Shown here: piece by piece, positions 11,754 through 40,340 of the stretch
How the letters are laid out: every line of letters starts with the position of its first letter
Numbering within the stretch: the first letter of the stretch is position 1
Virus record (IMG/VR): IMGVR_UViG_3300028883_000032
Coordinates: 124,001 to 188,000 of that record
DNA: 64,000 nucleotides
Direction: 5' to 3' (one strand)
Notes under the pieces: model-generated
The model's database searches: none
Told to the model about the DNA's origin: nothing
The model's input: the letters and a program-made list of their open reading frames with translations, nothing else
Position numbers and translations under genes: made by a program

Positions 11754-13415
11754 ATGTCTAAAAGAACACAAGCCCTTGTTCGAGCCATCAGTGCGGCAGG
11801 CGGACACGCGTTTTACACCGGTGGTTGGGTTAGGGATAAGGCTATGGGTATTCCGACCTCTGGAGATCTGGACATAGAGGTATATGGGCTTTCGAAAGAA
11901 GAATTGGAGGAAGTGCTGAAGCCATGGAATCCCGATCATGTGGGTAAGAGCTTTGGAGTTTTTAAGCTGAATGGTCTGCATGGCATTGATGTCTCCCTAC
12001 CCCGCAAGGATACTCAAGTAGACCCAAAAGATCATAAAGCTGTAATAGTCACTTATGATTCCAAGATGTCTACAAAAGAAGCATGCTTCCGTCGTGATTT
12101 TACGATGAATTCCATGTTGTTTGATCCTCTCCAAGAGAAAATTATTGATCATTGGGGAGGCCTCGTTGATATAAAGCGAGGTCAGATAAGAATGGTTTCT
12201 GAGCATTTCGGGGACGACCCATTGCGTGCATTAAGGGCTATAAAGTTTATGACCCGCACAGGATTTTCTTTGGAACCAAAAACAGCAGAAACTGTTCGAA
12301 AAATGAATACCTCTAAATTGCCCGCCGAAAGAATTTGGGGAGAGCTTTCGGACATGCTGGCAAAAGGAATATATTGGATAGATGCCTTAAACACATTAGT
12401 ATCCAGTGTCACAGGCAAATTCTGGTTTCCAGAACTTGTCGCATTGCACGGCTTGGAACAAGACCCAAGTTGGCACCCAGAGGGAGACGTGCTTACTCAT
12501 ACCGCGTTGGTGGTACAAGCAGCCTCTCAAATGAAAATTCCCAAAGACAAGAAGGTAAAATTTATGTTGGCAGCATTACTTCATGACTTGGGAAAAGCAA
12601 AAACAACGATACACAAAGATGGGCATATTAAAAGCCCTCTTCATGACCGCGTGTCCGCTGAGTTGGCCGAAGTACTTATGACCAGGTTACACGTGTCAAA
12701 AGAAATACAGAAATATGTGGTACCGATGGTGAGAAACCACATGTGGGCAGTTAGCTCCATGCCACATGGAAAGGAAGCCAAAGTTAGTGATGGTAAAATA
12801 CGCAAACTTTCTACTAAGGTTCCCAGCATCGACGATCTTATGGATTTGGCGGTGGCAGATAAAATGGGAACGACTGATGCTAGACTTAAGACCGAAACTT
12901 TGGATCATATCGAGTCAATTAGACAACGTGCTCGAAAGCTTAAGGTCCTTCATGCGGCTCCTAAGCCCATTATACAAGGTAGGCATCTTATTGATTTTGT
13001 TACTCCTGGTCCTCAGATGGGCGAGATACTCGCATGGTGTTACGAACAGCACCTGAATGGTAAAGTAACAAGCCCAGAACAGGGAATTGCCTTGTGGTGT
13101 AAACATCATAACCAAAAATTTGTAAAAGTCGGGTTCATACCGGGAGACGTACGCGGATTAATGTTGTCGTCAGATGCAACTGTGGCGCAGGTTATTTCGG
13201 CGGGACTAGTACCCACTGTCTATAACGAAGTACTGGTGCATCCAAGGCATGTAAAAATATCAAGTATCGGAGAGGATACCTACAAAAGCTGTAGTTTGTC
13301 CGATGTCCCTCGCCACATGGATAGAATATTGATTTTGGGAGTGCCTACAACTCCAAGCATGAAGTGGCAAGAAGGATTAAAAGAGCTCCTTGGGAGCCTT
13401 AAAACCACCGACTGA
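11754..13415 (+). CDS. cca: class II tRNA nucleotidyltransferase (CCA-adding type) with HD domain
   Basis: GGWVRD, DLDIE, RRDFTMN, DDPLRALR, ERIWGE, HPEGDVLTHT, LLHDLGK. Confidence 0.9.
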   Translation: MSKRTQALVRAISAAGGHAFYTGGWVRDKAMGIPTSGDLDIEVYGLSKEELEEVLKPWNPDHVGKSFGVFKLNGLHGIDVSLPRKDTQVDPKDHKAVIVTYDSKMSTKEACFRRDFTMNSMLFDPLQEKIIDHWGGLVDIKRGQIRMVSEHFGDDPLRALRAIKFMTRTGFSLEPKTAETVRKMNTSKLPAERIWGELSDMLAKGIYWIDALNTLVSSVTGKFWFPELVALHGLEQDPSWHPEGDVLTHTALVVQAASQMKIPKDKKVKFMLAALLHDLGKAKTTIHKDGHIKSPLHDRVSAELAEVLMTRLHVSKEIQKYVVPMVRNHMWAVSSMPHGKEAKVSDGKIRKLSTKVPSIDDLMDLAVADKMGTTDARLKTETLDHIESIRQRARKLKVLHAAPKPIIQGRHLIDFVTPGPQMGEILAWCYEQHLNGKVTSPEQGIALWCKHHNQKFVKVGFIPGDVRGLMLSSDATVAQVISAGLVPTVYNEVLVHPRHVKISSIGEDTYKSCSLSDVPRHMDRILILGVPTTPSMKWQEGLKELLGSLKTTD

Positions 13416-26803: not shown

Positions 26804-27166
26804 GGGCTCGACTGGAATCGACGGGTGGATATTGAGAATTGGTTGCGTTACTAGTCCTGTCAAGGACGATAATCCATGACAATCGATAACTGGCGAAACT
26901 CCAGTCCTTAAGGCTGCCTAATCCTTCGGGATTATGCACATAAAAGCCACGTTGACCGAATCCGATTCCCGTTAGGGTTCGAATCAACGTCGAAAATACG
27001 GGATGCTGTCTTACAGGCCTCGCTATAAGACATAAGATTTAGAGGATGGGTAGGGGTGATGAAAGTCTGGTGCCTGATCCCCGCCGAGATGAAATATCCA
27101 GACTAGGTAACGTAGACGCTAATTCTTGAGCCTCTCCGGACCCGGGTTCGAATCCCGGCGAGTCCA
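26804..27166 (+). ncRNA. ssrA: tmRNA, tag (A)GETPVLKAA*, CCA not encoded
   Basis: 5' GGGCTCGACTGGAATCGACGGG; 3' CCGGGTTCGAATCCCGG-CGAGTCC-A; G3.U pair; ATAACT-GGC resume context; tag ORF 26892-26921. Confidence 0.93.
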
Positions 27167-27168
27167 CT

Positions 27169-27196
27169 AAGCCACTATTATTAGTGGCTTTTTTTT
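27169..27196 (+). terminator. intrinsic terminator after tmRNA
   Basis: AAGCCACTA-TTAT-TAGTGGCTT plus T6. Confidence 0.85.
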
Positions 27197-29614: not shown

Positions 29615-29629
29615 CAGGTAGCTTTTTTT
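29604..29629. terminator. terminator at the convergence of the NYN gene and the RNAP gene
   Basis: AGCTACC-TTAACA-GGTAGCT plus T6. Confidence 0.7.
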
Positions 29630-32600
29630 ACCAGAATACTCCCTTTTCAGGATCAAACTGTGTAGCAAACTCGTTTGCATATAAGTATGCTGGCATGGGG
29701 TCATAGCCGTGTATATTTGTTTTGCTTGCTTTTGCTGCAGAGTCTTGAATAACCATTTTGATGTTATTACTAGTAACACGGCTTAACCAGTCGTCCCGTT
29801 CATGTGGTAAAACATTTATACTCTTGAAATAAGGTTTATATTCTATTTGTGGAAGCCCTTCTGCTTTTCTCTCTTTATTTTCCTTATCAACTACAGTTTT
29901 AAAAACTGTATCCCCCTTTATAAACCTTGAGTTATCTGGAGCATTTGTAATATAAGCGTTATCGCTTATACCCCTGATTATAGTTTCGAATGTACGCTTG
30001 TGGAATTTTCCGTCGTAAACGTTATCCATCCTATCCACAAGAGATTTTTGAGCAGTAATGAAGTCTGTTAATTCCGCTAATTCTTGCGGTTTTTTTGTAC
30101 CAGTACTTATAGGTTCTCCACGAGTAACTATATCGTCTATTTTAACCAGCAAGTCTCTTCCTGGTTTTACGTGGTGAAGTTTTGGACTATTACCATCTCC
30201 CATAATGGCAACTTCCCAACCTCCCGCCATTCCGGGTTTTATATTTATTACCCTACCTTCTATTTGTGCAAGTTCCGCTTTTCCTGGTAAAATTGCCGGG
30301 ACCTTTACAGTACGCTCTAATTCTGGGAATCCCGCTGTCACTCCTCCACCGGCTAGAGCGCTTCCCCCAGAGTGGAAAGTTTGCATGGTCAATTGTGTTG
30401 CTCTTTCAGATACAGCCTGTCCGTCTAAAACTCCAGCATTATAACCAATTTGTGGCAATTTTCCTTCAGGGGTTAGCCCATAACAAAAAGCACACATACC
30501 TCGTTCTGTTTCACAAGTTAGAGGGCTTCTAACCTTTATTAAACTGTTACCCAGTTTTTTAACCAAGTCAGGGTGGATTAAAGCCGTAATAGTATCCCCT
30601 ACTTCTACCACTCCCGGCACTCTTTGCTGGCTTATACGCCCTATAACGTTTTTGTCACTAGCAGATAACTCTATTCCATTTGTTGTACCACAATCTTGTT
30701 CGGTTATAAGCACGTCCTTCAGATTAGTTAAAAGCGCCTTATTTAAGGCACCAGTATCTTGTGTGTTTACGGCGCGATCAACGGTGCCTTTTCTTGCAGA
30801 ATACATGTGGTTCCAGAATGAAAAGTCGTCTACTCCCTCTGCCCAGGATTTTTCAACAGGAGTGGGGATTGGGCGCCCCTTAACATCCAAAAGAACCCCA
30901 GGCATGGTTAGTACTTGCCTAATACTGTCTGGTTTTCCCTGTGATCCAGAATCAAGCATGTGGAAAAACCTATTATCGCTTTTACGCGCATTTTCATATA
31001 ATTCTTTTTGAACTTTCTTGGAAGCTTCGTTATATATTTCAGCACGTTCCAGTGGAGTTTGGACACGGTTTGCTTTTTTGTGAGCAATTTCCATAATAGG
31101 ACCACGAGCACTACGGTCCATATCCAAGTCCGTTATACTCAAAGTTATAGGTTTACGATAAGAGTATTCTTTTCCAAGCTCTTTAAAGTGGTTCATCACC
31201 TCAGCAAACTTTTTAGGATGCCTATCGCTTATTTCCTTCATTATACGCTTAACCGTGTCAGCATCAAATACTAATGTTCTGTCTTTTAAGTCCTCCGGAA
31301 GCTTTTCTAAAACAAGCTCCTTACCGTAAGTTGTACGCCCTACTCCTGTTAATTCAACTTCCTCCGCTTCGTCAAGTTTGCCGTCTCTAACATCATCAGC
31401 CATTTTTTTGAATGTGCTATATTTTTTGCCATCATATTTTCTATCCACTTTTGTAAGATACCAAAGACCTTGTTGAAATATTTGACTAAATGAGCCAATG
31501 ATGGGCATAACAGGATCATCAAAATGGGGCCCATGTTGATAAATGTTTTTAGAAGGAATCATGCCAAACGCTTCACGAACGGCATCAGTGGATACAGGCA
31601 CATTAACTGACATGGCGTCACCGTCAAAGTCCGCATTAAAACCCTTAACAATAAGAGGATTTAATTTAATAGCTTGGCCATCAATGCGCTTTGGTATTGC
31701 AGCTTGTACACTATGTTTATGTAACGATGGAGCACGATTAAGTAGTACTGGTCTGTTCTCCATGGCCAAGTCTATTCCACGCAGGCCAAGTTCTGTTTCT
31801 TCTTGAATTTCCTTACGTGCAGTCAGGGGACTGTGACCACGTTTGGTCAGCTCCTGTACGGCAAATGGAAGATAAATTTCTTTTGCCATTCCTGTGGGAA
31901 TTCCTACCTCGTCTACTCCCAAGTTTGGATCAAGTGTAATGGTGCTGCGAGCAGAAAGATCCTGTCGTTTGCTCCAGACATTACTTTGTATAAAACCTTC
32001 TTTAGGTTCGGACCCAGATAGTGTGCGTAAGGCCCCCTCGTATTTTTCTTTCCCAAAGTGGGTTAGTTCTGTTAATCCCTGTAACTCCTTAAAATGATCG
32101 TAAAGCGACTTACGCACTTCATCAACTTTTATTTTCTCTGTGCCAATTTCCTTATCGCTAGCTAGGCCATCGTTAAGTTTCGATATGTCCCTATAATGAT
32201 AATTAATTGGACTTACCATTAAATCACCGGAAGGTAATGGGTAAACTGGCCTAAATACTGGAGGCATGACTGGAATTTTATTTGTGGTATAGGCTTCTTC
32301 CGCTGTCATTCCTAGTTTATCTAGAGCTTCTAAGTATCGTACGCGCTTATTAAGTTTATTTACGCGTGACTCCGGTGCGGTTTTTAATTCATTTTTTGAT
32401 TCCTGTAATTCTTTTTTTACATCTATAGCACGTAGGTCAGTAATTATTTTATCTATTCCACCCTCTTCCCCTTTAAGGCGCGCCTCATACTGAGGGCGGG
32501 TAATACCAAGCAATGATTGGATTGCTTTTTCATACATTGGAGAAGGCATGGTATCAGTTAATTCTATGTGGCTCCATTTTGTACCTCCATGTCCTCCGGT

Positions 32601-35600
32601 AATTTTTGAGTCAAACAACCCGCCTTTTAAAGTTGCTAAATTTTTACCCATTAGCATTTGTCCGGCATCGTCTAATTTACCGGCACTAATTTCAGATATT
32701 TTTTTATCCGTCAAAGGCATTAACTGAATTTCATTACCCTTTTTTTCACTATCAACCCCGGCGGCCTTCATGTAGGCTACCATTTTATCAAATACAAAAG
32801 ATTTTTGGGGAGTTGGTAGTGGCAAACCTAATTGTATTGCTCTCCACAGCTCATCATTCTTTTGTGATTTTATAGCAGTGAAATCTCTTAAATTGTGTTT
32901 TGCACCATGCGCTAGGAGAACATATGTTTGCATAGGATCGACGGATTGTCCCCCAGACTCTCCTCTACCGGGAGCCTCATTTACATTGTAGGAACCATAA
33001 CTACGGCTTTTTTCTTTATGTTCAACCACATGCATTAGTTTTAGTATGTACTGAGGACCAGTAAATACTTTCGATTTAAGAGGCTTACCGTCTTTGCCAT
33101 CTAATACCACCTCGTCAGGTTCAATTCCTTGTTTTTTAAGTTCGTTAAGGAGTATGTTTAATTTGTCCTTACCATCGAAATTACGAATGACGTAAGGTTT
33201 ACCTGTTTTTTCAGCAATTTTAGCCGCTGCTGTTTCTAACAATTGTGAGGGATTCATTCTAGAAGGTATTCCAAACGGAGACATTATCATGTCTACACGC
33301 TTACCACTAGCGGTATGTGGAGCCTCCTCGTCAGGTATGATCTTAACAACAATCCCTTTACCACCGTATCTGTTGGCTAGTTTGTCTCCCTCCACTAATG
33401 GGTGACTTACTTTCACACGAACTACAATTTTACGGCCCATTTTAGAAACATACATTACTTCCCCGGGCTCATCAAAATCATATACAACACTCCGGTCGTC
33501 ATATAATTTAGACACCTTACGGTTCATATTCTTTAGTATTCTCTGTTCGTCGGTCATTTCTCTTGGTTCAAGGTGTGCTATGAGTACATCACCCTTTTTA
33601 ACTCTTTCACCTTCTTTTATAATTCCTTCCGAATCAAGTTTATTATAACTTCCAGTATTTATAAAGGCACCTGGATATTCAGCGGCAAGCTTATCCTTAT
33701 TAAAAATACCATTAGTGGTTCTATGCGAAGTATAATTGTGCAGACTAGAATGTGTAAACTTTTTAGCAAACGAATCTGTTACCACCAACCCGTCTTCAAA
33801 TGAATAGCCCTTGTAAGGCATATAAGCTACTTGGACATTTGCGCCAAGACCTAATGTCTTTTTTCCACCAAAAGGTGGCTCAGCTTCAAAGTTATTTTTT
33901 GCTAATTCTTGTTTGGCCTTAACTACATCACCCGGTTTAACAGTAGGAGTACTGTGCAAGAACGACTCTTGGTTCATTGGAAAATAGTTATACAGCCCTA
34001 TTTTAAGGCTTTTTGACTCCCCTTCAGGTTTTATATGAATGTAGTCAGGTGTTACTTTAGTTACAACACCTGATTTAATGTCGTCGGGAACATATGGATT
34101 AAGATAGTCACCAATCGACTCATCAAAACTTTTATCGATTAATGGCCGACCAACTTGTACTAGAGGAGCTTCCCCATTATCAATGGTAAAAGCTTGTGAA
34201 GTGTTTTTAGCAGCCATTAGTGCCCTGTTTCCTTGGGTATGTTCTAAAAATGGCGTTAAGTTTGTTGGCCACCCAAACAGAGATTGAGGTTTAATGATGT
34301 AGCCATCAACATCTTTATGGGCAAAAACTTCTGCTTTTCCCTTATTATATCCCCGTATTACCCTTTTTGTAAAGTCCCCGTCATGTGGTATTGGTTTTCC
34401 ATTTTTTAAGACATACTGCTCACCAAAACCAACTCTCATGTTCCACAACTCATGCGGAGAGACGTACTTAATATCACCGTCTTTCATAATTACGGGAGTT
34501 GTCATCTGTCCTTTACTGTTTTTTTCAACAAACAGACTCAAAGGAAGAGAAATCCCCACTTTGGAACTATCCGGAGTTTGTACAGGATCAAGAAATCCAA
34601 TATGAGACGGATGGACGTTACGGGTTTCCATGGTTACCTCATGCATGGAAGGTATTCCTCCCGTACCTAATACTGAAGTTTTTCTCCATTCTGATAATAT
34701 TGAGACTGGGTTCGTTTGAGGAGGTGTCGCACTAAGGTCACTTGTAGTAAAGAAACTTTTTATGGGCTTACTATAAGTATCTGGACTTATAATATCCCTA
34801 ATCTGATCCTTTCTGTCCGTACGGAAACGTAAATTACCTGTAATTTGTTTGTCCTTTTTTTCAAGAAAGAACCCGAGTAGATCATCCACAGTCATGAGGG
34901 ACTTAAATACTAGCGAGTCACGCTCATCAGGATCTGCATCACCGCGTTGGACAGCCAGTAACTTTTTACTAACATCCATTAACGTATCTTTATTAACTTT
35001 TTTGTGTGATGCACCCAAAGTTATCAGTGTTGTATCTGGGTCGACTGCGGTTGTCTCAAAGTACTCATATAACATCTTTTTTGCTTCTTGTGGGGTTTTT
35101 GGTTTTTGATGTAAAACCTTTTCCACAAGGTTGACCCACATATCGGGCTCTTCTCCTTTATCGCTATTTTTGGCATAAAGGTCCTTGCCCCACAACTCAA
35201 GCATTTCTTGGTCTGTTACACCCAACGCCTTAAGAATGTTGTACAGTCTATAATTTTGATTCCCAGCACGCAATAGAAAAATTCCTTTTGTCGGGTCTAA
35301 AGTAAGTTTAAAATTAAAACCCTTTGCAAGATTAAATTGGGATTCAAAGTCACCATTATCTTTCATGCGTGTATATATACCAGACTTAAGGCGCAACTGA
35401 TTTGTTGTTTGGTATTCATTGCCGTCAATAATAGCACTAAATCTTTGTGTTTGTTTAGGTATATTGGCTATTTTTATTTTAGGTTTTTCATCAACAATGT
35501 CCCCTGTTTTTTTGTCGACAAGTCTTAAATGTCCGTAAACTGGAACAGACCAAGTACTACCACTAACTTTGGCTTTCTTTTGGGCTGGAAGATCGTTTGT

Positions 35601-35768
35601 GGGGGCGTCCTCGTCCCCTATGTCCAAACTAATCAATTCCAATTTTTTATTTTGTGCATCAATGGGGTATTGATTGGATATAAAATTACCAATTACATCA
35701 TAAATTTTAGAATTTTGAACATTAGGATTTAATGAGTCTTTTAATTCTCTGTCTGCATTCCTCATCAT
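29628..35768 (-). CDS. rpoBC: fused beta-beta' multisubunit DNA-directed RNA polymerase (2046 aa)
   Basis: beta motifs HPSHIGFLDPVQTPD, GDKLANRYGGKG, PFGIPSRMN, YILKLMH; beta' motifs HIEL, PVMPPVFRP, LLNRAPSLH, NADFDGD, ARKG, TQLTMQTFHSGG. Confidence 0.95.
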   Translation of the reverse strand: MMRNADRELKDSLNPNVQNSKIYDVIGNFISNQYPIDAQNKKLELISLDIGDEDAPTNDLPAQKKAKVSGSTWSVPVYGHLRLVDKKTGDIVDEKPKIKIANIPKQTQRFSAIIDGNEYQTTNQLRLKSGIYTRMKDNGDFESQFNLAKGFNFKLTLDPTKGIFLLRAGNQNYRLYNILKALGVTDQEMLELWGKDLYAKNSDKGEEPDMWVNLVEKVLHQKPKTPQEAKKMLYEYFETTAVDPDTTLITLGASHKKVNKDTLMDVSKKLLAVQRGDADPDERDSLVFKSLMTVDDLLGFFLEKKDKQITGNLRFRTDRKDQIRDIISPDTYSKPIKSFFTTSDLSATPPQTNPVSILSEWRKTSVLGTGGIPSMHEVTMETRNVHPSHIGFLDPVQTPDSSKVGISLPLSLFVEKNSKGQMTTPVIMKDGDIKYVSPHELWNMRVGFGEQYVLKNGKPIPHDGDFTKRVIRGYNKGKAEVFAHKDVDGYIIKPQSLFGWPTNLTPFLEHTQGNRALMAAKNTSQAFTIDNGEAPLVQVGRPLIDKSFDESIGDYLNPYVPDDIKSGVVTKVTPDYIHIKPEGESKSLKIGLYNYFPMNQESFLHSTPTVKPGDVVKAKQELAKNNFEAEPPFGGKKTLGLGANVQVAYMPYKGYSFEDGLVVTDSFAKKFTHSSLHNYTSHRTTNGIFNKDKLAAEYPGAFINTGSYNKLDSEGIIKEGERVKKGDVLIAHLEPREMTDEQRILKNMNRKVSKLYDDRSVVYDFDEPGEVMYVSKMGRKIVVRVKVSHPLVEGDKLANRYGGKGIVVKIIPDEEAPHTASGKRVDMIMSPFGIPSRMNPSQLLETAAAKIAEKTGKPYVIRNFDGKDKLNILLNELKKQGIEPDEVVLDGKDGKPLKSKVFTGPQYILKLMHVVEHKEKSRSYGSYNVNEAPGRGESGGQSVDPMQTYVLLAHGAKHNLRDFTAIKSQKNDELWRAIQLGLPLPTPQKSFVFDKMVAYMKAAGVDSEKKGNEIQLMPLTDKKISEISAGKLDDAGQMLMGKNLATLKGGLFDSKITGGHGGTKWSHIELTDTMPSPMYEKAIQSLLGITRPQYEARLKGEEGGIDKIITDLRAIDVKKELQESKNELKTAPESRVNKLNKRVRYLEALDKLGMTAEEAYTTNKIPVMPPVFRPVYPLPSGDLMVSPINYHYRDISKLNDGLASDKEIGTEKIKVDEVRKSLYDHFKELQGLTELTHFGKEKYEGALRTLSGSEPKEGFIQSNVWSKRQDLSARSTITLDPNLGVDEVGIPTGMAKEIYLPFAVQELTKRGHSPLTARKEIQEETELGLRGIDLAMENRPVLLNRAPSLHKHSVQAAIPKRIDGQAIKLNPLIVKGFNADFDGDAMSVNVPVSTDAVREAFGMIPSKNIYQHGPHFDDPVMPIIGSFSQIFQQGLWYLTKVDRKYDGKKYSTFKKMADDVRDGKLDEAEEVELTGVGRTTYGKELVLEKLPEDLKDRTLVFDADTVKRIMKEISDRHPKKFAEVMNHFKELGKEYSYRKPITLSITDLDMDRSARGPIMEIAHKKANRVQTPLERAEIYNEASKKVQKELYENARKSDNRFFHMLDSGSQGKPDSIRQVLTMPGVLLDVKGRPIPTPVEKSWAEGVDDFSFWNHMYSARKGTVDRAVNTQDTGALNKALLTNLKDVLITEQDCGTTNGIELSASDKNVIGRISQQRVPGVVEVGDTITALIHPDLVKKLGNSLIKVRSPLTCETERGMCAFCYGLTPEGKLPQIGYNAGVLDGQAVSERATQLTMQTFHSGGSALAGGGVTAGFPELERTVKVPAILPGKAELAQIEGRVINIKPGMAGGWEVAIMGDGNSPKLHHVKPGRDLLVKIDDIVTRGEPISTGTKKPQELAELTDFITAQKSLVDRMDNVYDGKFHKRTFETIIRGISDNAYITNAPDNSRFIKGDTVFKTVVDKENKERKAEGLPQIEYKPYFKSINVLPHERDDWLSRVTSNNIKMVIQDSAAKASKTNIHGYDPMPAYLYANEFATQFDPEKGVFW

Positions 35769-36162: not shown

Positions 36163-36501
36163 ATGGTAGACACAAAAAAAGAATTAGTAACTATAACAGA
36201 AACAGAGCTTTTACGTGAAGCATCGAAACTCATTCCTACTTCGCGGGTGGGAGATATCGCTGATAAAAGGCCCACTTATATAACAGTATTTTCTGATTCG
36301 GATGCGGAATGCTTTTTAAAATTTTGCATACCAGAAACCATACCAGAAGCCAAAAGAATTGAAATACAGGAAGTCATGACAATATATTTTGAAAACATGA
36401 TTAGCTTTCTAACATTTGGTAAATATAATAATAACTCTCTTTTAAGAGCTAAAAGGTATGTAGAAAGATCGGCCGACAACGGTAATGCCGTTCCAGAATA
36501 G
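36163..36501 (+). CDS. hypothetical protein (112 aa) upstream of the retron array
   Basis: ORF track; followed by a terminator. Confidence 0.65.
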   Translation: MVDTKKELVTITETELLREASKLIPTSRVGDIADKRPTYITVFSDSDAECFLKFCIPETIPEAKRIEIQEVMTIYFENMISFLTFGKYNNNSLLRAKRYVERSADNGNAVPE

Positions 36502-36523
36502 TCGCTTAACAGCGACTATTTTT
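36497..36523 (+). terminator. intrinsic terminator
   Basis: AATAGTCGCT-TAAC-AGCGACTATT plus T. Confidence 0.85.
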
Positions 36524-36525
36524 AT

Positions 36526-36534
36526 GGTATAAGA
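36526..36534 (+). promoter_or_regulatory. GGHATAAGA promoter-like motif (GGTATAAGA) for the retron ncRNA array
   Basis: Ends 4 nt before the first inverted repeat of unit 1. Confidence 0.7.
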
Positions 36535-36538
36535 TTTT

Positions 36539-36760
36539 AAGCTGTTAGAGCTCGCCCCTTATCCTCTAAGGGAACCATAGTGATTCGCTATGGTAATGTA
36601 CATTCAAACATAATTCAACACGGGCCTTTCGGCCCTATAACATGGTTATGTCCTCAAATTAGGATAGGATGATTTATAACGCCATCAAAGATGGCTATAA
36701 TGCGATCCTAAAAATTCTGATCGCCTCCTTCCCCGCGCCCTTCCGGCGATGTAACAGCTT
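36539..36760 (+). ncRNA. retron msr-msd unit 1 (222 nt)
   Basis: IR AAGCTGTTA/TAACAGCTT; G36548 opposite G36751; stem-loops CCCTTA/TAAGGG and ACCATAGTG-ATT-CGCTATGGT. Confidence 0.8.
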
Positions 36761-36805
36761 GTTCTAACCTGTCAATCTAACAGTTGACTACTGGTTTATA
36801 GATTA

Positions 36806-37225
36806 TGGAGAGGGGCTACCTCTAGTTTTTATACACTAGAAAGATAAGTGTTACGCTTATCTTGTCCTTTGTTCATTCCATAGCAGCATAATTCCACTTC
36901 TCATCCCCTCGACTTCGGCCGCGTTGGCCTCGTCTCAAGGATTCGAATTGGAAGCATTTACAATTTTATGCTGTTATGAATGAACTCGAGTTTTGCCCAC
37001 CAGCACCCAGTTATTTTCTGGGATCACAATTGCACACGCAGGCCGACGGCCATGGTCCCTGGGCCGGCTGCCTAACTGCAGGTATAATTCAACGTTTTGA
37101 AACGGCGCCAAAATTTAAACAAATTAAAAAGTGGCTAACGCACAATCGATGAGGATCCTCCGGATCCTTAAGGATCTAGCGCTAATGCATGCCTCTTTTA
37201 CTAAAAAAAGCGCTCGCCCTCTCCA
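36806..37225 (+). ncRNA. retron msr-msd unit 2 (420 nt)
   Basis: IR TGGAGAGGG/CCCTCTCCA; G36815 opposite G37216; stem-loops TCTAGT/ACTAGA and AAGATAAGTG-TTA-CGCTTATCTT; long hairpin 36871-36985. Confidence 0.78.
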
Positions 37226-37245
37226 ATAGAGTAACCTATGAACCG

Positions 37246-37335
37246 TCAGTTACAGAACCATTTGTGTATATTTCCCAATACACAACTGGGTGTTTCGCCC
37301 AGAAAGTGAAAAGAGTACTGATTATGTGTAACTGA
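37246..37335 (+). ncRNA. retron msr-msd unit 3 (90 nt, minimal)
   Basis: IR TCAGTTACA/TGTAACTGA; G37255 opposite G37326; stem-loops TTGTGTAT/ATACACAA and CTGGGTG-TTT-CGCCCAG. Confidence 0.78.
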
Positions 37336-37357
37336 ACCAACTTTGGTTGGTTTTTTT
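37335..37357 (+). terminator. intrinsic terminator between the ncRNA array and the RT gene
   Basis: AACCAAC-TTTG-GTTGGTT plus T5. Confidence 0.7.
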
Positions 37358-37376
37358 AGTTAACCAATTTTAACAA

Positions 37377-38306
37377 ATGACTAAACAATCTATAAGCATA
37401 TATAGTGTCCTTGATAAATCTCAAGAATATATAGAAGATATTATCTCTAACAAAGAAAAGCATTATATTACTTTTAGAATACCAAAACGTAATGGGCGTT
37501 TTCGTAAAATAGAGGCTCCTGACGACGCCTTAAAAGAGTTACAAACCACAATAAACGAAAAAGTATTTTCTATTTATAAACCCCATCGTATAGCGCACGG
37601 ATTTATTTCTAATAGATCGCCGAAAACAAATGCGGAAGCGCATGTGGGGGCAAAAATAATCGTGGAAGTGGATATAAAGGATTTTTTCCCATCCATTAAA
37701 AAAGACAGGGTTATTAAAGTACTTGAGTACTTATTTGTTCAAAAAGCTGGAATGTTTAAATCTTCCGCCCATAAGCAGGAAGCAATAAAAGTCATATCAG
37801 AATTAATTACTCACCATGATAGGCTACCCCAAGGAGCCCCAACTAGTCCACCGTTTAGTAATCTATCGGTGCTAGGAATGGATAAAGACTTATTAAAATT
37901 AGAAGAGCCTTATGGTGCAACCGTAACTAGATACGCAGATGATATCACAATGTCATCAGAATACAATGTACAATTGCCACAAGTTATCCCGGAATTACGT
38001 AAAATAGTGACCAAATATGGGTTTAAATTAAACAACGTTAAGACTCGAGTTATTCGACAAAATCGTAGGATGTTGGTAACTGGAGTAGTAGTTAACGAAA
38101 AACCGAACATTAGAAAGGATGTTCGACGTAGTTTAAGAGCTAAATTACATAATTACAATAGGGATCACACCCCTATCACCCAAGAAGAATACCAACGTAT
38201 TCAGGGGCAAATTGCTTGGATTAAGTATTTAAACCCTCTCCATGGAGATAGGCTCGGAGAACAATTGGACCGCGTTCAACGAGAAGAACCCACAGTAGTC
38301 TTATAG
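37377..38306 (+). CDS. retron-type reverse transcriptase (309 aa)
   Basis: IPKRNG..R.I.AP, AHGF, NAEAH (NAxxH), VDIKDFFPSI, LPQGAPTSP, TRYADDI, NNVKTR, VTGVVVN (VTG). Confidence 0.93.
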   Translation: MTKQSISIYSVLDKSQEYIEDIISNKEKHYITFRIPKRNGRFRKIEAPDDALKELQTTINEKVFSIYKPHRIAHGFISNRSPKTNAEAHVGAKIIVEVDIKDFFPSIKKDRVIKVLEYLFVQKAGMFKSSAHKQEAIKVISELITHHDRLPQGAPTSPPFSNLSVLGMDKDLLKLEEPYGATVTRYADDITMSSEYNVQLPQVIPELRKIVTKYGFKLNNVKTRVIRQNRRMLVTGVVVNEKPNIRKDVRRSLRAKLHNYNRDHTPITQEEYQRIQGQIAWIKYLNPLHGDRLGEQLDRVQREEPTVVL

Positions 38307-38309
38307 GCT

Positions 38310-38480
38310 ATGAAAAAACATAAGTTCTGGTGGATGTACAAATTCACTAACAGCATATTGCTGATGGTCCAGTATTTATTTTATAGAAGAGAGGGTGGTA
38401 TTGTTGCCTCATTTCAAAGCATTATTAACAATTGGGTTAAAAGAAACAGACCCGGACAACACGAGAAGAAAAAGAATTAA
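38310..38480 (+). CDS. small ORF (56 aa) directly after the RT
   Basis: Hand-translated MKKHKFWWMYKFTNSILLMVQYLFY...; starts 3 nt after the RT stop. Confidence 0.4.
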   Translation: MKKHKFWWMYKFTNSILLMVQYLFYRREGGIVASFQSIINNWVKRNRPGQHEKKKN

Positions 38481-38644
38481 TTATACGAAGGGTAGGGATA
38501 TTATAAAATGGTATCGTGCCCCTAGTATATCCGATGCAATGGGTATATCTCGTAAAACGAGATACTCAAGGATTAAATATATCACTGAAATAAGTCACGA
38601 TGATTATGTCAAAGGTGTAGCGCGCCACCACGAATATTAAAATT

Positions 38645-38653: not shown

Positions 38654-38777
38654 ATATGTGGCGAGGGCGGTGCCCACCAGAAACCTCGTGTTTCTGGCCC
38701 TAAAATATGTGGGACATAAAAAACATTTAGAAACTATTGAAGAAGTATTTAGTGCATTTAGAGAATATTAGATAAGT

Positions 38778-38850
38778 GTTACTGTAGCTCAATTAGTAGA
38801 GCGCCCCGCGATAAAACGGGGAGGTGTTGGAGCAAGGCCAACCAGTAATA
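38778..38850 (+). tRNA. tRNA-like element with a non-canonical T loop and an 8-nt anticodon loop (pseudo-tRNA)
   Basis: All four stems pair (GTTACTG/CAGTAAT, GCTC/GAGC, CCCCG/CGGGG, GTTGG/CCAAC); loops CGATAAAA and AGCAAGG. Confidence 0.65.
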
Positions 38851-38993
38851 GAGAGATTGTCCGCCGGGTCTAGCAAATAGATATTCGTAAAGGCAAGCTA
38901 GTACTTCCCCGCTGGGGTGGTCTCTCATTTTTTAGCCTATTGATTTTTACTACGGAAATGTGTATATTAATATACAACAACCAAGTATTATAT

Positions 38994-40340
38994 ATGGCTA
39001 GAAAACCTAGAATTTTAGCATGGTGTGATACTCCCACAGTAACTACCGGTTTTGGAAATGTGGCAAAAAATTTGCTTAGAGATGCCCATAAAGAGTTCGA
39101 TATTGATATAGTAGGTATTAATTACTGGGGGACTAAAAAATATGATACAGACAAGTGGTTCATTTATTCTACTGGACACAATATGGATCAGATGGGATAC
39201 AAAGTTCTTCCACTAGCCATGGAAAGCAGTAAACCCGATCTTGTTTTTTTATTCCAAGACTTGTTTGCTATCGATTTAGCATACCCATTAATACGCAAAG
39301 TAGATAAAGATACTCCTGTTGTCATATATTTTCCGATAGATGGTGGACCATTCAGTCGTACATGGGGAAATGTTTTAGAAGACAAAGGCATAAAGAAAAT
39401 ATTCACCTATTCTGAATTTGCAAACAGAGAAATACTTAAAGTAGTTCCAGATCTAAATAAAGAGTTAGAAATAATGTATCATGGAGTTGATGTGGATACA
39501 TTTAAACTTCTTCCCAAAGAGGAGGTGGACGAATTTAACCGTAGTAGGGGCTGGGATGGTAGGTTTGTAATGATGAATCTTAATAAATTTCAGCCTCGAA
39601 AAAATATCATGAACACAGTACTGGTGGGGTCACTGTTGGTTCATGGGTACAAGAAATGCAGATGCGGGCACTATTATTTATCAAAATATGATACTTGCGA
39701 TTTAAACGGTTGTGGTCAAGAGGACGTAATAGAAGAAGTTAAACCAAAACGTGATATAACTTTATATATGCACATGAACATAATGGAGCGTATAATGGGA
39801 CCATTAAGATCATGTGGGTTGTCTGCCATTGCATTAAATACAGGATGGACCGATGCCGATATAGACAAATATGGTACTTTGGCCCTTCTTGATCCTGAAA
39901 GGAATTTAGTATCAAACCCCTTCAGTGAAGAAGAATTAAATATGTTATATAACGCAATAAGCGTAAATATAACAACAACTTTGGGAGAAGGGTGTGGTTT
40001 ATCACTGTTAGAAAGTGCCGCCACAGGCACAACTAGTATAGCACCCAACCATAGTGCAATTCCAGAACAAATAGGTGACACCGGGCACCTTGTAAAAAAT
40101 GCAGCATACTTCTCTATGCACAATGATAATTCTCACATGCGTCCAATAGTGAGTGTTCCCGCGATGGTTGATGCGGTTGAAATTGAATATAAGAAATGGC
40201 TAGACAATGGCAGGGAAAAAATAATAAATTATGCTGCAATAGAACGGGTTCATGAGAAGTTTTTATGGGACGATAAACGTGAACAATTAATGTCTGCTTT
40301 TAGAGAATTAACCAAAGATGTAAACAATGAAAAAGAGTGA
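38994..40340 (+). CDS. glycosyltransferase, GT4 (GT-B) type
   Basis: ILAWCDTPTVTTGFGNVA, MYHGVD, NKFQPRKN, EGCGLSLLESAATG; Cys-rich insert CRCG..CDLNGC. Confidence 0.88.
   Translation: MARKPRILAWCDTPTVTTGFGNVAKNLLRDAHKEFDIDIVGINYWGTKKYDTDKWFIYSTGHNMDQMGYKVLPLAMESSKPDLVFLFQDLFAIDLAYPLIRKVDKDTPVVIYFPIDGGPFSRTWGNVLEDKGIKKIFTYSEFANREILKVVPDLNKELEIMYHGVDVDTFKLLPKEEVDEFNRSRGWDGRFVMMNLNKFQPRKNIMNTVLVGSLLVHGYKKCRCGHYYLSKYDTCDLNGCGQEDVIEEVKPKRDITLYMHMNIMERIMGPLRSCGLSAIALNTGWTDADIDKYGTLALLDPERNLVSNPFSEEELNMLYNAISVNITTTLGEGCGLSLLESAATGTTSIAPNHSAIPEQIGDTGHLVKNAAYFSMHNDNSHMRPIVSVPAMVDAVEIEYKKWLDNGREKIINYAAIERVHEKFLWDDKREQLMSAFRELTKDVNNEKE

What the first reader, a model, noticed from the sequence alone, without database searches (positions are those of the whole stretch)
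36864..37215. The unit-2 msDNA template is a natural polylinker: 20 six-base palindromes in ~350 nt
Seen (hand count): CGGCCG 36916, TTCGAA 36942, CTCGAG 36985, CAATTG 37027, CCATGG 37050, GCCGGC 37063, CTGCAG 37076, AACGTT 37091, GGCGCC 37104, AAATTT 37111, TTTAAA 37114, ATCGAT 37145, GGATCC 37153 and 37162, TCCGGA 37159, CTTAAG 37167, AGCGCT 37178 and 37209, ATGCAT 37185, GCATGC 37187. That is 18 distinct hexamers against roughly 5-6 occurrences expected at 1/64 per position. Also present are GGCC-N5-GGCC (36917-29), CGTCTC (36931), GGWCC, CCWGG and GCWGC. Most are isolated 6-mers, so hairpin folding does not explain them. Established: these are recognition sites of common type II restriction enzymes (EagI, BstBI, XhoI, MfeI, NcoI, NaeI, PstI, AclI, NarI, DraI, ClaI, BamHI, BspEI, AflII, AfeI, NsiI, SphI, SfiI), and phage genomes tend to avoid such sites. 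Inference: high-copy msDNA could be a broad-spectrum decoy that titrates host restriction enzymes or methyltransferases. Caveat: msDNA is single-stranded, so duplex sites need intramolecular pairing (GGATCC x2, AGCGCT x2, GGCC pairs), dimerisation or second-strand synthesis.
Basis: partly seen in the sequence, partly recalled or inferred. Interest (0 to 1): 0.9.

Follow-up and report, generated by a model that had tools for sequence, protein, structure and literature searches.

The report
Natural restriction-site array beside phage retron
A family of uncultured giant phages carries, next to a retron-type reverse transcriptase, a fast-changing non-coding stretch packed with almost non-repeating six-base palindromes (classic restriction-enzyme sites), which looks like a selected catalogue of such sites and may be a new way for a virus to deal with bacterial restriction enzymes.

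Summary
Window 36864-37215 holds 20 six-base palindromes, 18 of them distinct. The window-wide mean per 352 nt is 4.95, and 2000 dinucleotide shuffles give 5.6 ± 2.2 with a maximum of 14.

The array lies in an 875-nt non-coding region just upstream of a 309-aa retron-type RT. It is enclosed by a 22-bp long-range stem. A conserved promoter-like box precedes it and an intrinsic terminator follows it.

The window comes from a 207-kb viral contig. The decisive result is comparative:
- At least 22 related phage loci carry unalignable arrays with the same property (508 palindromes; the 18-array subset gives z ≈ 30).
- Duplicates are avoided (457 distinct against 405 ± 7 expected).
- The signal is specific to contiguous 6-mers.
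- Site usage is biased: GGATCC, GGCGCC and CTGCAG are the commonest.

Arrays occur essentially in one RT clade. None was found in 80 cellular retron loci or 44 RT-less related phage loci.

It is inferred, not shown, that the array is reverse-transcribed and acts on Type II restriction-modification enzymes as a decoy or a bait. Two caveats:
- Some relatives keep the array up to 4 kb from the RT and have a second, plain RNA unit.
- Genome-wide depletion of the same hexamers is not specific.

No description was found in the literature searched.

The parts
36519..36533 (+). Conserved 15-nt promoter-like box (TTTTTATGGTATAAG), directly after the terminator hairpin of the upstream ORF (36497-36520)
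   Evidence: Invariant in window, L003 and L005 although the surrounding sequence has diverged. The exact 12-mer core occurs once in the window. The upstream hairpin is I8. Promoter function is inferred.
36538..36761 (+). It is closed by an 11-bp stem, 36538-36549 with 36750-36761, and contains a GATTCGC-loop hairpin at 36574-36594.
   Evidence: MFE long-range helix; inverted repeats I10, I11 and I3. Comparable closed units occur in L003, L005, L189 and L185.
36792..36814 (+). 5' arm of the closing stem (a2-like). It is followed by G36815, the candidate priming G.
   Evidence: Helices of 13 and 9 bp with 37217-37245 (I13, 45, 61). The fold of 36785-37250 has z = -7.06 against shuffles. The branching role of the G is inferred only.
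36821..36863 (+). Two small hairpins between a2 and the array (msr-like). The second one, 36841-36863, shares the sequence TAAGYG-NNN-CGCTTA with L003.
   Evidence: msrHP match in window at 36845 and in L003 at 2679.
36871..36985 (+). Long hairpin (20-bp helix) forming the 5' part of the presumed template. It holds only 3 of the palindromes.
   Evidence: palindrome positions.
36916..37214 (.). Palindrome array: 20 six-base palindromes, 18 distinct. The densest stretch is 37027-37214. GGATCC x2 forms a 6-bp hairpin, and AGCGCT x2 pair in the predicted cDNA fold.
37217..37245 (+). 3' arm of the closing stem (a1-like)
37246..37335 (+). Small 3' domain closed by a 9-bp stem, with a UUCG-type hairpin (GGGTGTTTCGCCC, about 37286-37302). 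This hairpin recurs within 300 nt or less upstream of the RT in relatives.
   Evidence: I14, I7; motif in window, L003, L005, L169, L172, L178, L187.
37334..37360 (+). Intrinsic-terminator-like hairpin plus T-run, ending the non-coding RNA just before the RT start
   Evidence: The T-run plus TAACCA is conserved in L003 and L005.
37377..38306 (+). Retron-type reverse transcriptase, 309 aa
   Evidence: Pfam RVT_1 2.5e-23. PADLOC retron RT models, best RT_XIII at 3e-77. NCBIfam retron St85 family at 3e-66 but below the cut-off. NAxxH and VTG are invariant among relatives.
38395..38640 (+). Conserved 81-aa basic protein directly after the RT; function unknown; possible accessory component
   Evidence: 48-54% identical homologues lie in the same position in L003, L005 and L007. 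AF2 pLDDT is 86, with no PDB match at E < 0.4. No Pfam, PHROG or PADLOC hit.

Best explanation
The segment is the template part of a long retron-type non-coding RNA of a giant phage, and selection has filled it with a near non-redundant catalogue of Type IIP restriction-modification recognition sites.

Shown:
- The array is real and is bracketed by a long-range stem.
- It is flanked by a conserved promoter-like box and a terminator on the RT strand, and it lies next to a retron-clade RT.
- Related phages carry arrays of unrelated sequence but the same palindrome density. These arrays avoid duplicates, share preferred sites and turn over very fast.

Inferred:
- The RT primes at the G after the 5' stem arm and copies the array first, because the array adjoins the 3' arm. 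The product would be a multicopy DNA of roughly 200-350 nt.
- That DNA presents unmethylated sites for whatever Type II enzymes the host has. It could do so as an RNA-DNA hybrid, after second-strand synthesis, or through site-to-site pairing between copies.
- It competes with replicating phage DNA for those enzymes, that is, it acts as a decoy or sponge.

My own confidence by layer: the array is a selected feature, about 0.95. It belongs to the retron RNA and is reverse-transcribed, about 0.6. Its partners are restriction-modification enzymes, about 0.5. It acts specifically as a decoy, about 0.3.
For: Enrichment:
- Window z = 6.5.
- 17 of 18 related arrays have z between 4.5 and 10. Pooled, there are 417 sites in 6605 nt against 114.6 ± 10.2 expected, z = 29.7.

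Specific to contiguous 6-mers:
- 8-mers are only the chance extension of the 6-mers, and gapped forms are weak.
- In an unbiased scan, 29 of the 45 most over-shared 6-mers are palindromes. Most of the rest are overlaps of palindromes, or CTGAAG. CCTNAGG and GCTNAGC are also over-shared.

Catalogue property:
- 457 distinct of 508 sites against 404.8 ± 7.4 expected, z = 7.
- L172 has 38 distinct of 41, and L251 has 38 of 42.
- 63 of the 64 possible palindromes are used.

Turnover:
- L172 and L173 have close RTs and conserved flanks but unalignable arrays.
- L185 and L221 differ by 3 substitutions in about 740 nt. All three lie in the array, and two of them make or break a palindrome.

Link to the RT:
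- Arrays are confined to one RT clade (support 100/98) plus L213.
- No arrays in the other viral RT clades apart from L213, in 80 cellular retron loci or in 44 RT-less phage loci.
- The link survives rearrangement, with the array upstream or downstream of the RT.

Retron features: RT models and motifs (PMC7736814); closing stem and fold z = -7.06; terminator.

Precedent: a palindromic site on msDNA is read by a DNA methylase and cut by a restriction enzyme (10.1101/2020.06.22.160242, read).
Against: - There is no direct evidence of cDNA.
- In L172, L173, L178 and L187 a separate, strongly folded RT-proximal RNA without an array exists, and the array is 1-4 kb away. The array may therefore be a second RNA, or may not be copied at all.
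- Most sites are single. Intramolecular duplexes cannot form, and arrays are barely structured. A route to duplex sites must be assumed.
- Restriction acts on entering DNA before any phage gene is expressed, so a decoy made after infection could protect only replicating DNA, unless it is packaged.
- Cleavable decoys do not titrate a turnover enzyme well.
- Usage of a hexamer in arrays does not track its depletion in the phage genomes.
- Some clade members have little or no array.
- The RT-array association is confounded with phylogeny and synteny.
Confidence: 0.4

Rival explanations
1. Bait or sensor rather than sponge. As in defensive bacterial retrons, the RT-made DNA is a guard molecule. 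Here its many recognition sites let it report the presence of any sequence-specific DNA methylase or nuclease, from the host or from a competing phage. Modification or cleavage of the DNA then switches some phage response.
For: Retron-Sen2 msDNA is methylated at its GATC duplex by Dam, and this triggers the toxin. DpnI cuts that msDNA (10.1101/2020.06.22.160242). The catalogue property, site bias and rapid turnover fit a broad-spectrum sensor as well as a decoy. A sensor needs no stoichiometric titration.
Against: No effector or toxin gene is recognisable next to the RT in PADLOC, Pfam or PHROGs. The only conserved neighbour is an 81-aa protein of unknown fold class, and it is limited to the closest relatives. 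Most sites are single and cannot be duplex in cis.
Confidence: 0.2
2. The array is not reverse-transcribed. It acts as RNA, or as a double-stranded element of the phage genome itself, for example a regulatory or epigenetic region read by methylases. On this reading it sits near the RT only because this phage family shares gene order.
For: Array position relative to the RT varies from -1.3 to +4.1 kb. In many relatives the array directly precedes the glycosyltransferase-like gene rather than the RT. A plain RT-proximal RNA exists in several relatives. All array-bearing phages are syntenic (RNAP ... RT ... GT-like), so the co-occurrence is phylogenetically confounded.
Against: In window, L003, L005, L213 and L251 the array-bearing RNA is the only non-coding element between the upstream gene and the RT. 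The array is enclosed by a retron-like closing stem. The association persists through rearrangements. No array was seen in relatives without the RT. A cluster of unprotected restriction sites in the genome itself would be a liability.
Confidence: 0.15
3. By-product with no function for the individual sites. The palindromes arise from RNA or DNA structural needs, or from a mutational process such as template switching during reverse transcription followed by re-insertion.
For: The RNA around the array is strongly structured. One array (L172) folds far better than shuffles, z = -7.6. Interrupted palindromes show a modest excess.
Against: The signal is overwhelmingly for contiguous 6-mers (z about 30), which cannot fold on themselves. 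Arrays alone are barely structured (mean z -1.8). Duplicates, which would give stems, are avoided. The same specific hexamers recur in unalignable arrays. Other retron loci show nothing similar.
Confidence: 0.05
4. Cloning-vector contamination or assembly artefact.
For: It looks like a synthetic polylinker. The window's own contig is known from a single assembly.
Against: No match in 72,556 plasmid records at blastn sensitivity. The array is embedded in a 207-kb phage contig. Dozens of different arrays occur in independent metagenomes, and some were recovered identically from several samples.
Confidence: 0.01

Closest known systems
Bacterial retrons (RT plus msr-msd ncRNA producing msDNA), e.g. 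Retron-Sen2/Eco1; best model hits are PADLOC RT_XIII and the NCBIfam St85 family
   Same: RT of the retron clade with NAxxH and VTG. A structured ncRNA on the same strand, closed by a long-range inverted repeat next to the RT. There is a precedent that a palindromic site on msDNA is read by a DNA methylase.
   Different: It is encoded by a lytic-looking giant phage, not by a cell or prophage island. No recognisable effector or toxin is present. The presumed template is 2-4 times longer than typical msd and is not a simple hairpin. It is filled with 17-42 mostly unique six-base palindromes. It evolves by wholesale replacement. The array unit can be separated from the RT by several kb. A second, plain RNA unit is present.
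Protein DNA mimics that block restriction (T7 Ocr, ArdA) - from general knowledge
   Same: Proposed logic: occupy the DNA-binding site of restriction enzymes with a decoy so that phage DNA escapes.
   Different: Those are proteins aimed at Type I systems and are made or injected early. Here the decoy would be real nucleic acid made by reverse transcription and aimed at many Type IIP specificities at once. Nothing here has been tested biochemically.
Synthetic multiple cloning sites (polylinkers)
   Same: Dense, partly overlapping, mostly unique six-base palindromes. Density reaches about 1 site per 8-13 nt in L251 and L172.
   Different: Natural origin. No similarity to vectors. Every lineage has a different sequence.
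Defence-associated RTs whose cDNA content is the payload (DRT2, DRT9 and similar) - from general knowledge
   Same: An RT copies a dedicated ncRNA, and the sequence of the product, not mobility, is the function.
   Different: A different RT clade: Drt2 and Drt3 models score only 1e-8 to 1e-10. The product type differs. It is encoded by a phage.

Membership tests
Retron | RT belongs to the retron clade, with the NAXXH motif (region X) and the VTG triplet (region Y) | tested here: met
   80 PADLOC retron RT models hit, the best at 3e-77. N85-A86-x-x-H89 and V234-T235-G236 are invariant in 13 relatives. The motif definition is from PMC7736814.
Retron | Contiguous ncRNA on the RT strand, whose ends pair through inverted repeats (a1/a2) enclosing msr hairpins and the template | tested here: met
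   36792-36814 pairs with 37217-37245 (22 bp). It encloses two small hairpins, a long hairpin and the array. Fold z = -7.06. Bracketing stems are also predicted in L003, L005, L175, L182, L183, L185 and L192. This is prediction only; there were too few alignable sequences for covariation.
Retron | Branching G with a 2'-5' RNA-DNA link, and production of multicopy single-stranded DNA | not testable with these tools
   A G (36815) follows the 5' arm. No experimental or read-level data are available.
Retron | Template (msd) is a single inverted-repeat hairpin of up to about 160 nt (typical rather than strictly defining) | tested here: not met
   The presumed template, 36864-37216, is about 350 nt. 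Only 36871-36985 is a long hairpin. The array part folds little better than shuffles, z = -1.45.
Retron | Associated effector gene or domain (tripartite toxin-antitoxin organisation) | tested here: not met
   No PADLOC, Pfam or PHROG effector in the neighbours. The RT has no fused domain (309 aa). Stand-alone cassettes are known in some clades (PMC7736814).
Retron type XIII (PADLOC) / St85 family (NCBIfam) | Score above the curated cut-off; type XIII also has the partner proteins (winged-helix/SWIM protein and an accessory protein) and an N-terminal extension | tested here: not met
   The St85 model scores 223.6 bits, below the cut-off of 235. The RT_XIII match starts at profile position 141 of 469, and no partner proteins were found. 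These are best hits only, not membership.
Diversity-generating retroelement | Template repeat near the RT plus a near-identical variable repeat in a target gene | tested here: not met
   No second copy of 36786-37250 exists anywhere in the 64-kb window. The RT hits retron models, not DGR models.
Vector or synthetic polylinker contamination | Sequence identity to known cloning vectors; chimeric context | tested here: not met
   No plasmid match. The context is a contiguous phage genome. Many different natural versions exist.

The most novel reading that the evidence does not exclude
A clade of giant phages uses a retron-type RT to mass-produce a DNA 'polylinker'. This would be a nucleic-acid, broad-spectrum anti-restriction device, or a universal bait for sequence-specific DNA enzymes. 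Its site repertoire is continually re-written in an arms race with the Type II restriction-modification systems of the hosts. It would be the first natural anti-restriction mechanism based on decoy DNA, and the first retron with a counter-defence role.
Probability: 0.3. Interest if true: 0.95.

Novelty: new variant of a known kind. Interest (0 to 1): 0.88.

Why it matters
Retrons are known as bacterial anti-phage systems in which the msDNA is a passive sensor or scaffold. Here a phage-encoded retron-type module carries a template whose information content appears to be a selected list of restriction sites.

If the product engages restriction-modification enzymes, three things would follow:
- It would reveal a new class of counter-defence: a reverse-transcribed DNA decoy or bait that is broad-spectrum and rapidly re-programmable.
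- It would explain why a whole family of about 200-kb phages conserves an RT.
- It would give a natural read-out of which Type II specificities matter in the environment, through the strong shared bias for GGATCC, CTGCAG, GGCGCC, ATCGAT and similar sites.

It would also offer very long natural retron templates for biotechnology. Even if the mechanism differs, the statistical signature (non-redundant six-base palindromes, conserved as a property but not as a sequence) is a kind of selection I did not find described.

Tried and rejected
- Rfam: nothing in the region at gathering or E ≤ 1 except a tRNA at 38778-38850.
- GenBank phages: no DNA match, and the best RT match is 34.5% identical, so no cultured relative.
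- Specific depletion of array hexamers elsewhere: only a general palindrome avoidance (O/E 0.83-0.89) and no correlation with array usage. This predicted support failed.
- Hairpin or structure explanation: rejected.
- 8-bp sites: no enrichment beyond chance extension of the 6-mers.
- Coding: only short, unconserved ORFs cross the arrays, and stops occur in all frames.
- DGR: rejected.
- Vector contamination: rejected.
- Effector search in neighbours: nothing.
- 81-aa protein: a confident model but no structural match.
- Apparent in-frame stops in glycosyltransferase-like homologues turned out to be the ends of the alignments.
- Literature: seven full-text searches found no description of restriction-site-rich retron templates or phage RT decoys. 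That library lacks most subscription-journal papers.
- From memory, the least-used hexamers (TTGCAA, CTATAG, TAGCTA) are ones with few or no known enzymes. I could not verify this, so it is only a lead.
- I did not build a covariance model of the RNA units, because the sequences are too diverged to align.

Full report
OBSERVATION.
Eighteen are distinct. The SfiI-type GGCC-N5-GGCC and the CGTCTC are also there.

In 352-nt sliding windows the 64-kb window averages 4.95 palindromes (sd 2.54). This region is the maximum at 20, and the next best non-overlapping window has 14. Two thousand dinucleotide-preserving shuffles of 36900-37215 give 5.55 ± 2.22 and never exceed 14.

The array is GC-richer than its surroundings, 46.6% against 39.2%. 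There is no match to any plasmid record.

CONTEXT.
The window is part of IMG/VR contig UViG_3300028883_000032, 206,856 bp. It carries:
- a 2046-aa fused RNA polymerase beta-beta' gene;
- a tmRNA and several tRNAs;
- a baseplate protein and a CCA-adding enzyme.

The array lies in an 875-nt gap between a 112-aa ORF and a 309-aa ORF at 37377-38306. That ORF is a retron-type RT:
- Pfam RVT_1;
- 80 PADLOC retron RT models, the best being RT_XIII at 3e-77;
- the NCBIfam St85 family at 3e-66, just under its cut-off;
- invariant NAxxH and VTG motifs, which define retron RTs according to PMC7736814.

ANATOMY OF THE NON-CODING REGION.
After the terminator hairpin of the upstream ORF comes a 15-nt box (36519-36533). 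It is invariant in the two syntenic relatives L003 and L005, although everything around it has diverged. The rest of the region, in order:
1. A plain structured unit, 36538-36761, closed by an 11-bp stem.
2. A second unit closed by a 22-bp long-range stem, 36792-36814 with 37217-37245. It contains two small hairpins, a long hairpin (36871-36985) and the palindrome array (densest at 36988-37215).
3. A small 3' domain with a UUCG-type hairpin (37246-37335).
4. An intrinsic terminator, 37334-37360.

The fold of 36785-37250 is far better than shuffles, z = -7.06. The array part alone is not, z = -1.45.

This layout is that of a retron ncRNA: 5' arm, G, small hairpins, template, 3' arm. The array adjoins the 3' arm, which is the part a retron RT would copy first.

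The predicted cDNA can make only a few sites double-stranded in cis: the two GGATCC copies and the two AGCGCT copies.

THE COMPARATIVE RESULT.
RT relatives were collected from metagenomes and IMG/VR. Many carry a region with the same property but no sequence similarity:
- L172: 41 palindromes, 38 distinct, in 517 nt.
- L251: 42 palindromes, 38 distinct, in about 800 nt, with 33 of them in one 300-nt stretch.
- L175: 36 palindromes, 31 distinct.
- L189-191: 33 palindromes, 28 distinct.
- L192: 32 palindromes, 26 distinct.
- Also L182, L240, L184, L183, L213, L185, L005 and others.

Seventeen of eighteen non-redundant arrays have z between 4.5 and 10 against shuffles. Pooled, they hold 417 palindromes in 6605 nt against 114.6 ± 10.2 expected.

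The signal belongs to contiguous six-base palindromes:
- Eight-base palindromes occur exactly as often as chance extension predicts.
- 3-N-3 and gapped forms are only modestly raised.
- In an unbiased scan of all 6-mers, 29 of the 45 most over-shared words are palindromes. Most of the rest are overlaps of palindromes.
- CCTNAGG and GCTNAGC are also over-shared.

Within arrays the same palindrome is avoided: 457 distinct of 508 against 404.8 ± 7.4 expected from pooled usage. Sixty-three of the 64 possible palindromes are used. Usage is very uneven: GGATCC and GGCGCC occur in 16 of 22 arrays and CTGCAG in 15, while TTGCAA occurs in none.

EVOLUTION.
L172 and L173 have close RTs and conserved flanks, yet their arrays cannot be aligned. 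L185 and L221 are nearly identical. Their only three substitutions in about 740 nt fall inside the array, and two of them create or destroy a palindrome. Arrays therefore turn over much faster than their flanks while keeping the property.

SPECIFICITY.
On an RT tree the arrays fall in one well-supported clade (100/98), plus the outlier L213. The other viral RT clades have no array, apart from L213; the one further high count, L214, is a composition effect in a 64% GC locus. No array was found in 80 loci around cellular retron RTs. None was found in 44 related phage loci that have the glycosyltransferase-like gene but no RT.

All array-bearing phages are syntenic: RNAP fusion, then the RT, then the glycosyltransferase-like gene. 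The association is therefore partly confounded with phylogeny. However, it survives rearrangement. The array is found in three positions:
- directly upstream of the RT (window, L003, L005, L213, L251);
- about 1.2 kb upstream, behind an ORF (L172, L173, L178, L184);
- 2-4 kb downstream, just before the glycosyltransferase-like gene (L175, L181-183, L185, L187-192, L240).

A T-run follows the array on the RT strand in 14 of 18 loci.

CAVEATS.
- L172, L173, L187 and L169 have a separate, strongly folded RNA unit without an array immediately upstream of the RT. The window also has a plain unit. Which unit the RT uses is unknown.
- Some clade members have the RNA but little or no array: L408 and L169/L170 (which retain only a short 10-site stretch about 870 nt upstream), L171, L174 and L176.
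Palindromes are mildly avoided in the rest of the window (O/E 0.83-0.86, against 1.00 for non-palindromes) and in 347 kb of family sequence (0.89). Array usage does not correlate with depletion (rho 0.15, p 0.23).
- No effector gene is recognisable. The conserved 81-aa protein after the RT gives a confident model with no structural match.

INTERPRETATION.
Contiguous six-base palindromes are the hallmark of Type IIP restriction-modification recognition (general knowledge). A selected, non-redundant, fast-changing catalogue of them next to an RT points to an interaction with such enzymes.

The best-supported mechanism is that the RT copies the array into multicopy DNA that presents unmethylated sites. 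Whether this DNA acts as a decoy (my preferred reading) or as a bait or sensor cannot be decided here. The sensor reading is analogous to Dam methylation of the GATC duplex of Retron-Sen2 msDNA, which DpnI can cut (10.1101/2020.06.22.160242).

The decoy reading has three difficulties:
- Duplex sites are needed.
- Restriction acts at DNA entry, before phage genes are expressed.
- Restriction enzymes turn over, so cleavable decoys titrate them poorly.

The sensor reading has the missing effector as its difficulty.

A role without reverse transcription remains possible, because array and RT are sometimes separated. Structural, mutational and artefact explanations are poorly compatible with the data.

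NOVELTY.
Seven full-text searches found no description of such arrays or of RT-made anti-restriction DNA. No cultured relative exists in the phage collection.

I file it as a new variant of a known kind: a retron-type RT plus ncRNA. The content of the template, the phage host and the lack of an effector are new. If the decoy reading is right, the mechanism would be categorically new.

Noticed in passing
window 26804-27169 (+): A full-length tmRNA gene (Rfam 111.8 bits; tag peptide GETPVLKAA) is encoded by the phage, alongside tRNA-Gln, tRNA-Arg and tRNA-Ser and a CCA-adding enzyme (11754-13415).
   Followed up: no
window 29628-35768 (-): A single 2046-aa ORF fuses RNA polymerase beta and beta' domains (Rpb2_6 at 1e-62; Rpb1 domains). 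It is conserved at 42-61% identity in all array-bearing relatives and serves as a marker of this phage family.
   Followed up: partly
window 38777-38851 (+): A tRNA (Rfam 44.7 bits) that ARAGORN reads with an odd four-base anticodon (ataa). It lies between the RT module and the glycosyltransferase-like gene, exactly where many relatives have the palindrome array.
   Followed up: no
window 38940-40340 (+): A 466-aa glycosyltransferase-like gene (PHROG 2170). It is conserved in the whole family and, in many relatives, lies immediately downstream of the array's terminator. I did not examine whether it modifies DNA, which would bear on restriction.
   Followed up: partly
L185 9590-9720 and L221 (aligned in A4): The 5' unit of the array-bearing RNA contains a 29-nt tandem repeat. 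Each copy holds a CCTAGG site. There are 4 copies in L185 and 5 in the otherwise near-identical L221.
   Followed up: no
window 36519-36533; L003 2451-2465; L005 2287-2301; L408 about 175-190: An invariant box (TTTTTATGGTATAAG, or ...TATAAT in L408) directly after the upstream terminator. It is probably a phage promoter. A near-match occurs at window 41201.
   Followed up: partly
window 37286-37302; L003 2959; L005 2928; L169 9722; L172 9734; L178 9732; L187 9716: A small hairpin with a UUCG-type loop (consensus GYGYTTCGCNC) recurs within 300 nt upstream of the RT, whatever the position of the array. It is a candidate RT recognition or regulatory element.
   Followed up: partly
L172 8781-9297: Unlike the other arrays, this one folds far better than shuffles (z = -7.6) although 38 of its 41 palindromes are distinct. 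This is unexplained.
   Followed up: no
L169 9559-9643: A relative without a full array keeps two GGATCC sites that pair as the base of a long hairpin (CCAGGATCC ... GGATCCTGG). GGATCCTGA/G also recurs near the end of several arrays (L005, L183, L192, L240).
   Followed up: no
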